Part shown: positions 26,401 through 32,400 of the stretch, one piece after another
Layout of the letters: the number at the start of each line of letters is the position of its first letter
Position numbering within the stretch: position 1 is the first letter of the stretch
Source of the DNA: Mytilus californianus
Taxonomy: Eukaryota
Assembly: GCF_021869535.1 (NCBI RefSeq)
Contig: NW_026262723.1
Coordinates: 73,222,001 to 73,286,000, forward strand
Length of the DNA: 64,000 nucleotides
Reading direction: 5' to 3'
Made by a program: the position numbers and the translations under genes
Notes under the pieces: generated by a model
Databases searched by the model: none
What the model saw: only the letters and a program-made list of their open reading frames with translations
What the model was told of the DNA's origin: nothing

Positions 26401-29400
26401 GAGGACCTCAAATTGAAGTCTAAAATAAGAAAATTTATTAAAGTGTGATTAAGAGTTTTCAAGAAAGAAATCATGGCATGATTCGATTCATTATCAAGTT
26501 ATTTTACCTATTTAGATATATCTAACTTCCAGGTAACACATGTTGTATCTCAGAACTGTGATGGTTTACATATGAGAAGTGGTCTTAACAGAAGAAAATT
26601 ATCAGAAATCCATGGAAATATGTACATAGAGGTATGTAAACACGATCGCATTTGGAATCACTAATTTTGCATTGCCCATTTATTCTTTCATCTGTCCTCA
26701 AAATACAGCTGCTGGTGATATCTTGTTGAACTGTTTGACTATTTACTCAGATGAGTACACTATGTTACAAATGGTAATTTTCATCCCTCTGCAATGGAAA
26801 TGTAAATTCTATAGAAAATTGAATTGTAAGTGCTCTCAAGCCTAAATTTCTTGTTTGGTTTTGAATTGAAAATGAAGTTTATCAGCAATGCCTTGGGCAG
26901 TGCCGATCATTCATTTCAACATTTCAATATGTCCCGTTGAAATGTAAGTTCTAGTGAAAATTGCATTGTAAGTGCATTCAAGCCTACATTTCTTGTCAGG
27001 TTTTTGTGAAATTTATATCAAAGGTGTATATCAGCAGGACTTTAGACTGGTTCAATAATCAGTGCAGATCAACTATTTTTACAGGACGTATGCCCCTTGG
27101 AAAAAGAAATTCTCTGGAAAATTGCATTGTCAGCGATTTCACACCTTCATTTCCTGTAGGATATTTTTGAAAAAGTAAAGAACCAAAAAAAATGTATTTA
27201 ATACTGTAAATTCAGAAATTAATGCAAGGTTTTTATTAATGCGAATAATGTGACAAGGTGATTATCGCATTAATAAGACCTCGCATTCTGATATCTCAAT
27301 AATTTCTGAATTTACAGTACTTTTATCCCTCTCCATGAGTGGGGCTAGATTGTATCCACCTTGTCCATCCGTCTGTCCATTCTTCCATCAAATATTTCTG
27401 TCACACCTTTTTCTGATACTACTTTTACCTGTGAGTACATTTAAGAACTTTTGAAAACTTTCTTCCTGTTTGCTGATACTTTAAAATTTTCAATATATTG
27501 AATGAACTTTAAAAAATTTGACATATTTCTCCAGTACAGGAGTTGTAAAATGTGAGCACGTTTTCAACTTGCACATTACATATCTGCCTTGGCTTGTCGG
27601 TCAAGTACAAAGCAGGATTTATTTTCATATCACATTTTCATGTTTACTTCCTCAATATGCATTTAATTTTCTTTTAAACTTTAAAACAGCCATCATCATC
27701 ATCTCAATAATGTTAAGCAAACAAAAAACAATCAATCTATATTACTAAACTTATTTAATGATTCTACTTACTGTCTTTCTCAGATTTGTTACAGTTGCAG
27801 GCCACATCAAGAGTACATCCGACTATTTGATGTGACTGAGAAGACAGGAGTGAGACGTCACCAGACAGACAGGAATTGTCACACCTGTAAACAGCCACTT
27901 AAGGATACTATAGTACACTTTGGGGAGAAGGGAGGGATGAAATGTCCATACAGGTGGAAAGAGGCTGCTAAAGCTGCTGATAGATGTGATATTATCCTGT
28001 GTCTAGGATCTAGTCTCAAGGTTGGTTCTTATATTATCCTATGTATAGGATCTAGTGTCAAGGTTGGTTCTGATATAATCCTGTGTCTAGGATCTAGTCT
28101 AAAGGTTGGTTCTAATATAATCCTGTGTCTAGGATCTAGTCTCAAGGTTGGTTCTGATATAAACCTGTGTCTGGGATCTAGTCTCAAGGTTGGTTCTGAT
28201 ATTTTCCTGTGTCTAGGATCTAGTCTCAAGGTTGGTTCTGATATAATCTTGTGTCTAGGATCTACTCTCGAGGTTGGTTCTGATATGAACCTGTGTCTAG
28301 GATCTAGTCTCAAGGATGTTTCTGATATTATCCTATGTCTAGGATCTAGTCTCAAGGTTGGTTCTGATATTTTCCTGTGTCTAGGTTCTAGTCTCAAGGT
28401 TGGTTCTGATATTATCCTATGTCTAGGATCTAGTCTCAAGGTTGGTTATGATATAATTCTGTGTCTAGGATATAGTCTCGATGTTGGTTATGATATAATT
28501 CTGTGTCTAGGATCTAGTCTCAAGATTGGTTCTGATATAATCCTGTGTCTAGGATCTAGTCTCATGGTTGGTTCTGATATAATCCTATGTCTAGGATCTA
28601 GTCTACAGGTTGGTTCTGGTATCATCCTATGTCTAGGATCTAGTCTCAAGGTTGGTTCTGATATAATCCTGTGTGTAGGATCTAGTGTCAAGGTTGATTC
28701 TGATATAATCCTGTGTCTAGGATCTAATCTCCTGGTTGGTTCTGATAAAATCCTGTGTCTAGGATCTAGTCCCAAGGTTGGTTCTTATATAATCCTGTGT
28801 CTAGGATCTAGTCTCAAGGTTGATTCTGATATAATCTTGTGTCTAGGATCTAGTCTGATGGTTGTTTCTGATATGATTCTGTTTCTAAGATAATATAAAA
28901 GTTAAAAAATTTGAAAGATTGCCAATTAGACAACTCTACATCAGACACCAAATGACAGAGAAGTAAGCAACTATAGGTAGCCGTACAGCCTTTAACAATG
29001 AACAAAACCCATGTCCTGTGTCTAGGATCTTGGCTTATAGTTGGTTCTGATAATACTGATAACACTGTCTCAAGAACATTATTGTTATTTGTAGTTTTGA
29101 TGTTCATATTATCCCCTTTATTGAATTCTTAATAGGCTATATTTTCTGTTATATAGATACTGAAAAAATACTCATGTTTATGGTGTATGGACAGAAAAAT
29201 GAAGAATAGGCCACAATTGTATATAGTTAACTTACAGTGGACACCGAGAGATGATGCCGCTACTATGAAAATCAATGGTAAATTTAAACATATGATGGTC
29301 TTGGGTGCGTGTGAGAAGGAGAGGTCAGATGCCCATGATACAAGATCACATGAAACAACAAGAAGTTCTAAAACTTTCTGTAAAATCAGACCAATAAAAA

Positions 29401-32400
29401 ACAGTATTATATAATTTGGTTTCAATATTAGAAATATTATACTATAGGTTATGAGCTAAGGATATATTCTAACATGACGTTCTTCAAACACTTTGAGTAC
29501 ACACCTGTGGTAAAATATGAATATATTGTTTGGGCTGTTCCGATCGTACTCCCGCATCATATGCTTTTTTATGAATGAGCTACCTGACGTCATAGAACGA
29601 TGACATAAGAATATAAGCATTTTTACGGGAAAATACACGCTTATGAAACCGAAAATCATCACAACAAGGAAACGTAAACAAACGATGCTAAAATGTGTTA
29701 TATAAGACATATAAAAACAATTATCATGTAGATTCATCAAAATCTATCTAAATATGTCATTGTAAATAGTTTATGCATGCCATTTATTCAGTTTGCTCCG
29801 TTCTTTTACGTCAATTTAATAGTGCGTTTATTTATGGGAACGGCAAATAATGCCTTCACCTAGAGCGCTTCAATCCAAAAGAATTGCTGTATTTGTCCTA
29901 TTAGAATCGAAATAATTCATGGGGGCTTGAATATATCGTGATTTTACCACGGGTTGTCCCTTTATGCCGATATTTTACCCCTCGCTATCGCTCAGGGTAA
30001 AATATTTGTCATAAAGGGCCAACCCGTAGTAAAATCACGATATATTCAAGCCCCCATGAATTATTTCTTAATTTTTATATAGAAGACTCATCAGTAAGTT
30101 TTGTCATGAACATGCATGAAATATTTGCCACTGGATATTAAGCAACCAACAATCAATCAATTATCAGTCTGTCAAGGATTCTGTTGTCATACGTTTTAAC
30201 CAGTATAACACTTATATTTCTCAACTTATTTATTATTTCGACCATTCATCCAGTAAGTTCATCATAACTTTCTTGTCAGTTACAAAAACATTTTAATTGT
30301 CTTGCCTTAACAGAGTCAAAAAGTGGTTCATAGGTATTCTGTTTCCAGCGCCGGCGGCAGCATTGTCAACAATGTATTAGTTTTTGATTAGGTCAGTTTA
30401 TGGGGAACCACTAGTAATAGGTCAATGATATTTGGTATGCAGTTGTATCAGCACTGGCACATCTAATTTCCATAGAGATTTTTTGGCCCTGCCAACTTAG
30501 TCATGGTCTATTGACTTTGAAACTTTTGCTTAATTTACATGTATTAGTTTGTGATTAGGTCAGTTTATGGGGAACCACTAGTGGCAGGTCAATGATATTT
30601 GGTATGCGTATGTAATAGCATTGGCACATCTCATTTCCATGGAGATTGTTTGGCCCTGTACCTTCAGTCATGGTCTTTTGACTGAATATTTTGCATAACT
30701 TACTTGTTAAAGTATTGCTATTTTGATTTCAACATTTGCATTGTACTTTCAAAATAAGTCAAAGGTGAGACATATCTCTGTGTCAACAGTTTATTTTACA
30801 TTTGAGTTCTTTTGAATTTGAATTAAAGATATTTATTATCAATGCCTGTTTTAAAATCCATTATCATAAAATCCTCCCCATTTTGTATTGCCTTGACGGA
30901 GTCCAAAAGCGAGACATAGGTATGCTGTTTCAGGTGTAGGAGGTGGCGGCGTCAACAATATATTAGTTTGTGATTAGGTCTAGTTTATGGTGAACCACTA
31001 GTGGTAGGTCAATGATATTTGGGATGCAGTTGTATTAGCATTGGCACATCTCATTACCATGGAGAATATTTGGCCCAGCCCCCTCAGTCATGGTCTATTG
31101 ACTTTGAAACTTTGCTTAATTTACATGTATTAGTTGGTGATCAGGTCAGCTTATTGGGAACCACTAGTGGTATGCAGTTGTTTAAGCATTGGCATATCTC
31201 ATTTCCATGCAGATTATTTGGCCCCGTCCCCTCAGTCATGGTCTATTGGCTTTGAAACTTATGCTTAGTTTTCATGTATTAGTTTTTGATTAGGTCAGTT
31301 TAGGGGGAACCATAAGTGGTAGGTCAATGATAATTGGTATGCAGTTGTATAAGAATTAGCACATCTCATTTTTATGGAGAATATTTGATCCTAACCCCTC
31401 AGTGATTGTCTATTGACTTTGAAACTTTTGCTTAGTTTACATGTATTAGTTTGTGATTAGGTCAGTTTAAGATGAACCACTAATGTTAAGTCAATGATAT
31501 TTGGTATGCGAATGTATTGGCATTTGCAAGTTTCATTTCCATGGAGATTATATAACCCCACCTCCTCATTATAGTTCATTGACTTTGAAACTTTTACTTA
31601 GTTTACAAGTTAATGTTTGTGTTTAGGTTTGTTTAAAGGGAACAACTTATGAAAAGTCAATGGTATTTGGTATGCAGTTGTATTAGCATTGGCACATCTC
31701 ATTTCCATGGAAATTGTTTAGCCCTGTACCTTCAGTTATGGTTCATTGACTTTGAATACTTGCATAACTTACATGTTAAAGTATTGCTATTTTAATTTTA
31801 ACATTTGCATTTTCAAAATAACAAGTAGGCGAGACAATCTCTGTGTTTACAGTTTATTAGATAGGGAATTGTAAATAAATTGCTTTCATAAAAATATGTG
31901 CTATACTTGTCACCTGGATAGCATCTTTATTTTTTTTCAGAATATCATAACGTTTTCATGTAATGAATAATATTAAGATCTTGAATGTATAGAATCGTCA
32001 GACAGGGAATGTCTCTTTCTAGAGGGAATTTGAAGAATGAATACTTTGTTAATGTTTGTACAATGGTCTTCTGACATGGATGCCACTTACTTTCTATTCC
32101 AGTTAACTTTAAAATTCAGTAGAAAAATTTAGTATTTGATATTCAAACCTTGCATAGGTTTGATTGTCAGGAAATTTTACAGTTGCAAACTGCCTTTTAC
32201 TTTGTTTCACTTTGGAAAGTTTTTTTGTTATTTGGAACAATTCAAAAAACAAATTATAGAAAATTTGATAGTACTTTTCATGCTAAACCATAATTTTGAA
32301 ATAGATTTGTACATACTGTACTGTATATAATCTTTTCACCTATTTTGTCCATGTTTTTATTACAGGTCGATGCGATGATGTAATGAGACGAGTGATGAGA

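What the first reader, a model, noticed from the sequence alone, without database searches (positions are those of the whole stretch)
27988..28893. SIRT7 exon-7 splice donor amplified into an in-frame array of 20 extra 42-bp units
Seen: each unit is the last 33 nt of exon 7 plus the first 9 nt of the intron. Twelve of the 20 copies keep an AG|GTTGGT donor like the native one, all in phase 0, and there is no in-frame stop until 28891. Established: the duplicated peptide [11 protein letters not shown] is the Rossmann beta-strand and GSS/GTS loop that binds NAD+ in sirtuins. Inference: donor choice could give isoforms with 0-18 extra 14-aa copies of this element while still splicing in frame to exon 8. 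This would be a tunable and probably length-polymorphic splice-site ladder in a catalytic domain. The AG|GT junctions could also serve as recursive splice points. Caveat: the unit is naturally stop-poor (antisense frames are open too), so the ORF alone does not show selection.
Basis: partly seen in the sequence, partly recalled or inferred. Interest (0 to 1): 0.82.

Follow-up and report, generated by a model that had tools for sequence, protein, structure and literature searches.

The report
Splice-junction minisatellite in mussel SIRT7
The end of exon 7 of the California mussel's SIRT7 gene, with its splice donor, has been copied about 20 times into the following intron; this kind of repeat is already known ("mirage"), every transcript seen ignores the extra donors, and so it is probably a harmless, length-unstable passenger.

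Summary
From 27988 to 28891 there are 21 in-register 42-bp units plus a half unit. Each unit is 33 nt of exon 7 plus 9 nt of intron. Twelve extra AG|GTTGGT donors are all in phase 0, and the frame is open to 28891.

The array is not an artefact. Pieces of it occur in DNA of another individual, and an array sits at the same boundary in all five Mytilus species examined:
- 42-bp unit in M. californianus and M. coruscus
- 51-bp unit in M. edulis, M. galloprovincialis and M. trossulus
- 4 to 46 units

The scallop has the same intron but no array.

The isoform ladder is not supported. One RNA contig, two raw RNA reads and all eight annotated Mytilus SIRT7 proteins use only the first donor (LGSSLK|ILKKY). 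That junction is colinear with SIRT7 of other phyla. RNA depth was low, so minor use of downstream donors is not excluded.

Substitutions in the units look neutral: codon positions are flat, the syn/nonsyn ratio is as expected, donors are kept at the chance rate, and M. trossulus has an in-frame stop.

This is a new member of a known kind, the splice-junction ("mirage") minisatellites of human F7, IFI6 and CBS and of amphioxus Adh3. This scan had already noted such arrays elsewhere in this genome (ANKS3).

One oddity remains: the three large long arrays contain no indels.

The parts
27784..28020 (+). SIRT7 coding exon 7 (79 codons, phase 0 at both ends); ends ...[11 protein letters not shown]
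   Evidence: tblastn of the M. californianus RefSeq protein P0121; 78% identity to scallop SIRT7; aligns to residues 195-273 of solved SIRT7 9gmk_K; RNA contig covers 27782-28018
28018..28026 (+). Authentic 5' splice site AAG|GTTGGT (cut after 28020). It is the only donor seen in use. It is weak: T at +3 and G at +4.
   Evidence: Joint 28020|29157 (GT..AG) in one RNA contig and 2 raw RNA reads; annotated proteins read K|I here; other donors of the gene are mostly GTA...
27988..28869 (+). 21 in-register 42-bp units (unit 0 = native exon end + 9 intron nt; 20 extra copies). Each encodes about [14 protein letters not shown] in the exon frame. 12 extra units have an intact AG|GTTGGT.
28870..28891 (+). 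Terminal half unit (unit positions 1-22, 4 mismatches); the frame closes at TAA 28891-28893. It is orthologous to the terminal half unit of M. edulis.
28892..29012 (.). Non-array insert; 28917-29012 is a fragment of a very high-copy dispersed repeat. It lies at the same place in M. edulis, so it is older than the species split.
   Evidence: Word depth 6,000-11,000 against about 5-20 in the flanks, with loose ends at 28917/28968 and 29012; alignment with L008
29010..29079 (+). Relic of one to one-and-a-half degenerate units (ends ...GTTGGTTCT at 29048) beyond the insert, then what is probably the original intron start (GATAATACTGATAA...). It is also present, more decayed, in M. edulis.
29157..29277 (+). 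SIRT7 coding exon 8 ([14 protein letters not shown]...MKIN + 1 nt); acceptor AG at 29155-29156

Best explanation
This is a splice-junction ('mirage') minisatellite. A 42-bp piece made of the last 33 nt of SIRT7 exon 7, the donor and 9 nt of intron was duplicated in tandem.

Origin (inferred): slippage between short direct repeats. The likely original intron start, CTGATAAT..., resembles two places in the exon, CTGATAGAT and GTGATATAAT. These places are 9 nt apart, which would explain both the 51-bp and the 42-bp unit.

Since then the array has grown, shrunk and homogenised by unequal exchange. It did so separately in the californianus/coruscus clade and in the edulis complex.

For the spliceosome the whole array is intron. 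The most upstream donor, next to the exon's own signals, is chosen, and the 12 identical copies downstream stay silent pseudo-sites, as shown experimentally for the human F7 intron-7 minisatellite. The in-frame open reading frame follows from the coding origin of the unit and its length of 3x14 nt; it is not maintained by selection.

Shown here: the structure, its presence in five species, use of the first donor in all transcripts and gene models seen, and the neutral substitution pattern. Inferred: the slippage origin, and the reason why the first donor wins.
For: Structure.

Reality of the array:
- Contigs of another individual (X2) and of a run under another organism label (X8) carry array pieces with 0-4 differences.
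- An array lies at the same boundary in M. coruscus (42 bp, 13 + at least 8 in-register units (TRF 12.6 copies), split by a 5.2-kb insertion), M. edulis (22 x 51 bp), M. galloprovincialis (4 x 51) and M. trossulus (46 x 51).
- The 3' half unit, the inserted repeat fragment and the relic unit are orthologous between M. californianus and M. edulis.
- Pecten maximus has the same intron position but no array.

First donor used:
- Joint 28020|29157 in an RNA contig and 2 raw reads, no other joint, zero sense depth in the array.
- RNA-like runs hold only the exon share of words.
- P0121, P0122, P0123, P0124, P0242, P0243, P0244 and P0250 all read LGSSLK|ILKKY.
- Orthologues from chiton, hemichordate, urchin and amphioxus are colinear there.
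- No protein with extra units was found.

Neutrality:
- M. californianus has 54 substitutions, at codon positions 16/18/20. Distinct events are 9 syn : 23 nonsyn against 34 : 89 possible.
- P(no stop) is 0.16 by simulation.
- 12 intact donors are seen against 11.9 expected.
- M. edulis and M. trossulus show the same pattern, with a TGA in M. trossulus unit 43 and block duplications of 3 and 8 units.

Precedent: PMC1557585 (F7, IFI6, CBS, LMNB2, PDGF) and PMC3087553, PMC3902484 (amphioxus mirages that do not disturb splicing).
Against: - RNA evidence is thin: about 3 sense reads over the exon end in the one raw-read run, of which only about 6% was read, plus one contig. Contigs drop rare variants, so donor use of a few per cent, or use in one tissue, would have been missed.
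- In two human precedents (IFI6 6-16, CBS) the first two pseudo-sites are used.
- Both unit lengths are multiples of three.
- The three large long arrays (M. californianus, M. edulis GCA_963676685, M. trossulus) carry 70 distinct substitution events but no indel. The indel:substitution ratio of flanking introns (0.06-0.08) predicts 4-5, giving P about 0.005-0.014. That could hint at selection on the frame. Against this, the unit lacks the homopolymer runs where indels arise, and M. coruscus shows a 1-nt deletion (assembly quality unknown).
Confidence: 0.8

Rival explanations
1. Leaky ladder. The second and perhaps third donor (28062, 28104) are used at a low level, as in human IFI6 and CBS. 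This would give in-frame SIRT7 mRNAs with one or two extra 14-residue copies of the strand and GSS loop. They would be splicing noise or weakly deleterious products, not a regulated system.
For: Donors 28062-28230 are identical to the authentic one in the 9-nt site. In-frame products would escape nonsense-mediated decay. IFI6 and CBS give precedent. RNA depth here was too low to exclude it.
Against: No such joint, read or contig was seen. Gene models built with RNA support in five species show no such isoform; the three M. trossulus isoforms differ only in the C-terminal tail. In F7, identical pseudo-sites are not used at all.
Confidence: 0.15
2. One reading: a selected, tunable isoform ladder. 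Donor choice across the array yields functional SIRT7 variants with 0-18 extra NAD-loop modules, and the frame and donors are maintained by selection.
For: All donors are in phase 0. Unit lengths are multiples of 3 in both clades. There are no indels in three long arrays.
Against: - Substitutions hit codon positions evenly, the nonsyn:syn ratio equals the mutational expectation, and donors are lost at the chance rate.
- M. trossulus carries an in-frame stop, and M. coruscus a frameshift and a 5.2-kb insertion inside the array.
- M. galloprovincialis has only 3 extra units.
- No transcript or protein supports it.
- Inference from the sirtuin fold: repeating a core Rossmann strand inside the catalytic domain should unfold it, not tune it.
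Confidence: 0.03
3. Cis-acting splicing element. The cluster of U1-binding pseudo-donors downstream of a weak authentic donor (GTTGGT) helps recruit U1 snRNP, or protects the intron from premature cleavage. Copy number would then modulate SIRT7 output.
For: The authentic donor is non-consensus at +3 and +4, while the other donors of the gene are mostly GTA-type. An array has persisted at this boundary in all five Mytilus species.
Against: Copy number ranges from 4 to 46 with no sign of constraint, and donors decay at the neutral rate. Pecten splices the same junction without an array. Minisatellites persist without function. No expression data bear on it.
Confidence: 0.04
4. Assembly artefact: a collapsed or inflated repeat.
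For: Tandem arrays are error-prone in assemblies. The older M. edulis assembly shows a garbled middle part that the newer one lacks.
Against: Variant-specific pieces of the array occur in short-read contigs of an independent individual across all bins. Arrays are present in six assemblies of five species. The exact copy number in this individual was not verified with long reads.
Confidence: 0.01

Closest known systems
Human F7 intron-7 37-bp VNTR (Borensztajn et al. 2006, PMC1557585)
   Same: It is a minisatellite whose first unit spans the exon 7/intron 7 boundary, so the authentic, rather weak donor (there UGG|GUGGGU, here AAG|GUUGGU) is followed by identical pseudo-donors. The array is length-polymorphic. 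Only the most upstream site is used.
   Different: F7 has 5-9 units of 37 bp with only 4 exonic nt, so its units are not in frame and carry almost no coding sequence. The mussel array has 21 units (up to 46 in M. trossulus) of 42 or 51 bp that are mostly exonic sequence and stay in frame. The silence of the pseudo-sites has been shown by mutagenesis in F7. Here it rests only on a few reads and on gene models.
Amphioxus 'mirages' (Adh3, globins, TnC, PGBD5; Canestro et al. 2002 cited in PMC3087553; PMC3902484)
   Same: These are tandem duplications of an exon-intron boundary in an invertebrate. Many units keep AG/GT. Splicing is undisturbed. Length is unstable, evolution is concerted within the array, and the edge units diverge more.
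   Different: It is a different phylum and different genes. The amphioxus arrays described have few units (3-6 in the globins). The mussel array is retained at one boundary across at least five species, with two clade-specific unit lengths.
Human IFI6 (6-16) intron 2 and CBS intron 13 minisatellites (as summarised in PMC1557585)
   Same: The authentic donor is followed by many reiterated donors (25 in IFI6; 15-20 units in CBS).
   Different: There the first two pseudo-sites are constitutively used, which gives extra isoforms. No such use was seen here.
Recursive splice sites (ratchet points) of long Drosophila and vertebrate introns (from general knowledge, not tested in a paper here)
   Same: An AG|GT junction inside an intron would regenerate a donor after splicing.
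   Different: Ratchet points have a strong pyrimidine tract and sit in very long introns. The unit has 45-55% pyrimidines and two competing AGs just upstream, and the intron is 1.1 kb.

Membership tests
Splice-junction ('mirage') minisatellite | Head-to-tail tandem array with a minisatellite-sized unit | tested here: met
   Period 42, 21.5 copies, 88% matches, 0% indels; 19 pattern matches against 0 in shuffles
Splice-junction ('mirage') minisatellite | The first unit spans a real exon-intron boundary, so the authentic donor is reiterated in the intron | tested here: met
   Unit 0 is 27988-28029. The exon ends at 28020, as shown by the RNA joint 28020|29157, tblastn of P0121 and colinearity with orthologues. 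There are 12 extra intact donors.
Splice-junction ('mirage') minisatellite | Normal splicing uses the authentic (most upstream) donor | tested here: met
   The only joint seen is 28020|29157 (1 contig, 2 reads). Eight annotated Mytilus proteins read LGSSLK|ILKKY.
Splice-junction ('mirage') minisatellite | Downstream pseudo-donors are completely silent | tested here: inconclusive
   Sense RNA depth in the array is zero, but only about 3 reads cover the exon end. Minor use cannot be excluded.
Splice-junction ('mirage') minisatellite | Length instability and concerted evolution, with divergent edge units | tested here: met
   4, 22 and 46 units of 51 bp in the edulis complex, and 21 and about 23 units of 42 bp in californianus and coruscus. 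There are block duplications, and the two M. edulis assemblies differ. The terminal half unit and the relic unit are the most diverged. Polymorphism within M. californianus was not measured.
SIRT7 (class IV sirtuin) | Sir2 catalytic domain; closest relatives and the solved structure are SIRT7 | tested here: met
   Pfam SIR2 at 86 bits on P0121. Best hits are named sirtuin-7. Exon 7 aligns with 9gmk_K SIRT7 residues 195-273 at E 1e-28. P0121 is 100% identical to the window's last exon.
Alternative 5' splice-site ladder in use (IFI6/CBS type) | Junction reads or transcripts from downstream reiterated donors | tested here: not met
   None in RNA reads or contigs, in annotated isoforms or in protein searches. 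The test has limited power.
Recursive splice site | A strong 3' splice site (pyrimidine tract, no competing AG) juxtaposed to a donor, in a long intron | tested here: not met
   Pyrimidine fraction is 0.45-0.55 against 0.60-0.85 at the six boundaries where an AG acceptor is seen (other printed boundaries are approximate; one scores 0.50). Two AGs lie within 15 nt upstream, and the intron is 1,136 nt. There is no lariat or sawtooth data.

The most novel reading that the evidence does not exclude
The frame of the array is under selection. Both clade-specific units are multiples of three, and three long arrays (87 extra units, 70 substitution events) have no indel. This would be so if downstream donors are used often enough, in some tissue or stress state, for in-frame products to matter. 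Array length (4-46 units among species) would then set the dose of SIRT7 variants that carry repeated NAD-loop modules.
Probability: 0.05. Interest if true: 0.65.

Novelty: new member of a known kind. Interest (0 to 1): 0.3.

Why it matters
As a single locus it matters little. It is an intronic repeat that the spliceosome appears to ignore, and gene predictors and readers should not mistake its long open frame for coding sequence.

Its value is as a natural test bed for 5' splice-site choice. Related species offer the same weak donor reiterated 3, 12-14 or 38 times at fixed spacing and in frame, so any mis-selection gives a stable, countable product.

It also adds molluscs to the short list of animals (humans, amphioxus) in which splice-junction minisatellites have been described. 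Together with earlier notes of this scan on the same genome, it suggests that they are common in mussels.

Tried and rejected
- Dispersed satellite or transposon origin. Rejected: the unit is found only at this locus in the 1.65-Gb assembly, and it carries sequence that encodes a peptide conserved from mussels to vertebrates. The direction of copying is therefore exon to array.
- Open frame as evidence of selection. Rejected: only 3 of 126 possible single changes make a stop, and the simulated P(no stop) is 0.16.
- Conservation, or purging, of donors. Rejected: 12 are intact against 11.9 expected, and the other species show the same.
- 'M. edulis breaks the frame, hence neutral'. I first drew this from the older assembly L008. 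I withdrew it when the newer assembly L013 showed a clean 22-unit array. The garbled middle of L008 is probably misassembly or another allele.
- Looking up M. trossulus isoforms X2 and X3 gave no contig; X1 worked.
- The original 'mirage' paper (PMC117041) is not held. It is cited only through PMC3087553.
- Antisense ORFs of 136 and 95 aa in the array are mechanical products of the repeat.
- A Pfam Stanniocalcin match on the read-through translation has no significant stretch. It is an artefact of the Cys/Leu-rich repeat.
- Left out by rule: I built no spliced isoform models (exon 7 + n units + exon 8). I therefore made no structure prediction of a +14-residue SIRT7. Exons were searched by reference only.
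Full report
**What is there.** Tandem Repeats Finder reports one array at 27987-28891: period 42, 21.5 copies, 88% matches, no indels.
- Cut in register from 27988, unit 0 is the last 33 nt of the exon plus the first 9 nt of the intron. Twenty further full units and a half unit (28870-28891) follow.
- A 33-nt unit pattern with up to 3 mismatches matches 19 times in the window and never in 100 shuffles.
- Twelve of the 20 extra units keep AG|GTTGGT, all in phase 0. Two units have lost the GT.
- The exon frame runs open for 369 codons to the TAA at 28891.
- The other two sense frames have 37 and 41 stops. The antisense frames have 26, 4 and 40.
- The array is found only at this locus in the 1.65-Gb assembly, as far as that search reaches.

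**The gene.** The last exon of the gene is 100% identical to RefSeq protein LOC127709244 of Mytilus californianus (P0121, 1101 aa).
- tblastn of P0121 places ten coding exons in the window. Exon 7 is 27784-28020 and exon 8 is 29157-29277.
- Exon 7 is 78% identical to scallop SIRT7. It aligns with residues 195-273 of solved SIRT7, 9gmk, and falls in the Pfam SIR2 domain.
- In chiton, hemichordate, sea urchin, amphioxus and ark-shell proteins the sequence runs ...ILCLGSSLK then ILK/LRK.Y... without a gap. The 28020|29157 junction therefore gives the conserved protein.

**Is the array real?** Yes.
- Contigs of an independent DNA run of the same species (X2) cover every bin of the array, and the listed pieces differ by 0-3 letters.
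- A run filed under another organism label (X8) carries several pieces with 2-4 differences, and is identical in the flanks.

More telling, an array sits at the same boundary in every Mytilus genome I could reach through annotated SIRT7 proteins:

| Species (locus) | Unit | Units in register | Notes |
|---|---|---|---|
| M. californianus (window) | 42 bp | 21 | open frame of 369 codons |
| M. coruscus (L011) | 42 bp | 13 + at least 8 in register (TRF: 12.6 copies) | split by a 5.2-kb insertion; one 1-nt deletion |
| M. edulis, newer assembly (L013) | 51 bp | 22 | clean array |
| M. galloprovincialis (L012) | 51 bp | 4 | units identical apart from one base in the native unit |
| M. trossulus (L014) | 51 bp | 46 | 38 extra intact donors; in-frame TGA in unit 43 |

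- The 51-bp unit is 42 exon nt plus 9 intron nt.
- The older M. edulis assembly (L008) has about 15 units with a garbled middle. I take that for misassembly or another allele, because the newer assembly is clean.
- Pecten maximus has an intron at the same position but no repeat.
- The Pinctada imbricata gene has no intron there.

**History.**
- The terminal half unit, the non-array insert after it, and a decayed unit beyond the insert (29010-29048) align between M. californianus and M. edulis. Positions 28917-29012 of the insert are a fragment of a very high-copy dispersed repeat; word depth there is in the thousands.
- So an array of at least two units, already interrupted by that insert, existed before the two clades split. 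The present arrays were homogenised separately.
- Block duplications confirm turnover by unequal exchange: units 7-9 equal units 14-16 in M. edulis, and units 19-26 equal units 33-40 in M. trossulus.
- What follows the relic unit (GATAATACTGATAA...) is probably the original intron. Its first bases after GTTGGTT, CTGATAAT, resemble two places in the exon, CTGATAGAT and GTGATATAAT, which lie 9 nt apart.
- Slippage between these short homologies would produce a 51-bp or a 42-bp duplication. This is inference from the sequence. It also means that the two unit lengths are not independent draws, so both being multiples of three is weak evidence of anything.

**Which donor is used?**
- One RNA-like run (X10) holds a 1706-nt contig that joins 27782-28018 to 29155-29279. 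With the 2-nt ambiguity this is 28020|29157, GT..AG.
- The one raw-read RNA run (X21, stranded, about 6% read) has two reads with the same joint and no other.
- In the sense orientation RNA depth is about 3 over the exon end and 0 in every bin of the array. A single pair over about 27950-28140 lies in the opposite orientation, so it is not a sense SIRT7 transcript.
- Six RNA-like runs from two studies hold 0.16-0.19 of the sampled words of 27600-29400. Exons 7 and 8 alone make up 0.20.
- All eight annotated proteins of five species read LGSSLK|ILKKY. The three M. trossulus isoforms differ only near residue 995.
- Two word searches of 5.8 billion proteins, covering lengths 203-646 and 606-1927, found no protein with an extra unit.

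The depth is low, however, and a minor isoform of a few per cent would have been missed.

**Selection?**
- In M. californianus the 20 extra units carry 54 substitutions (32 distinct events). They fall at codon positions 16/18/20.
- Distinct events split 9 synonymous to 23 non-synonymous, against 34 to 89 possible. The higher synonymous count per cell (20) comes from two synonymous variants that five units each inherited.
- Only 3 of 126 possible changes create a stop. Simulation gives P(no stop) = 0.16. It gives 11.9 intact donors, against 12 observed.
- M. edulis (11 non: 3 syn) and M. trossulus (17: 6, plus one stop) look the same.
- Neither the peptide nor the donors are conserved or purged.

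**One thing I cannot explain.** The three large long arrays have 70 distinct substitution events and no indel. Alignable flanking introns give 0.06-0.08 short indels per substitution, so 4-5 would be expected (P about 0.005-0.014). The unit lacks homopolymer runs, and M. coruscus shows a 1-nt deletion. I therefore treat this as a modest oddity and not as evidence for a maintained frame.

**Recursive splicing.**
- The 20 nt before the unit's AG|GT are 45-55% pyrimidine, with two competing AGs.
- This gene's real acceptors have 60-85% pyrimidine where the printed boundary shows an AG; several tblastn-derived boundaries are approximate.
- The intron is 1,136 nt. The sequence therefore gives this idea little support.

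**What is known.**
- Borensztajn et al. 2006 (PMC1557585) describe exactly this arrangement in human F7: a 37-bp VNTR whose first unit spans the exon 7/intron 7 boundary, with 5-9 units. They show by mutagenesis that the identical pseudo-sites are functional but that only the most upstream one is used. They explain this by 5'-to-3' scanning.
- The same paper lists IFI6 6-16 (25 pseudo-sites, first two used), CBS intron 13 (two used), LMNB2 and PDGF (only the authentic donor used).
- In amphioxus such arrays were named 'mirages' (Canestro et al. 2002, cited in PMC3087553). They are reported not to disturb splicing, to be length-unstable, and to evolve in concert with divergent edge units.
It reports five such arrays in ANKS3 of this same genome, and another note (s1-302664) reports one with about 40 donors. 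I did not check those loci.
- I found no paper on such arrays in Mytilus.

**Verdict.** The functional reading is not supported.
- The locus is a new member of a known kind. It stands out only for its large, mostly exonic, in-frame unit and for its persistence at 4-46 copies across a genus.
- I put 0.8 on a silent, neutrally evolving splice-junction minisatellite, and about 0.15 on low-level noise from the next one or two donors. A selected isoform ladder or a U1-recruiting element gets a few per cent each.

Noticed in passing
window 27988-28869; L013:13423-14544; L014:7475-9820: The three large long arrays contain 70 distinct substitution events but not one indel. The indel:substitution ratio of flanking introns predicts 4-5 (P about 0.005-0.014). 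Both unit lengths (42, 51) are multiples of three.
   Followed up: partly
window 28917-29012: Fragment of a very high-copy dispersed repeat (summed word depth 6,000-11,000 in DNA runs). It is transcribed from other loci, mostly in one orientation, in the RNA run. It lies at the orthologous place in M. edulis.
   Followed up: partly
L011:22176-27361: In M. coruscus a 5.2-kb insertion, presumably a transposon, sits inside one unit and splits the array in two. The letters TTA flank it on both sides.
   Followed up: no
window about 27950-28140: One read pair of the stranded RNA run crosses the exon 7 end into units 1-3 in the orientation opposite to SIRT7. It may be an antisense transcript or a trace of DNA.
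   Followed up: no
window 30372-30683 and 31168-31761: Two arrays of a 167-bp tandem repeat (1.9 and 3.6 copies) lie in intron 8 of SIRT7.
   Followed up: no
M. edulis has a 51-bp, 2.1-copy repeat at the corresponding place.
   Followed up: no
L010:4500-4949: The Pinctada imbricata SIRT7 gene reads through the exon 7/8 junction without an intron (150 residues contiguous at 100%). The whole 1012-aa gene spans only 6.5 kb.
   Followed up: no
P0002 (Mizuhopecten yessoensis) and P0124 (M. edulis, older annotation): These look like gene-model errors. The scallop model skips the exon 8 equivalent. The older M. edulis model lacks 35 residues that include the GAGIS motif, which are present in P0121.
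   Followed up: partly
window 27600-27782: Intron 6 just upstream of exon 7 holds further dispersed-repeat pieces (depth 50-530, loose ends at 27602, 27708 and 27740).
   Followed up: no
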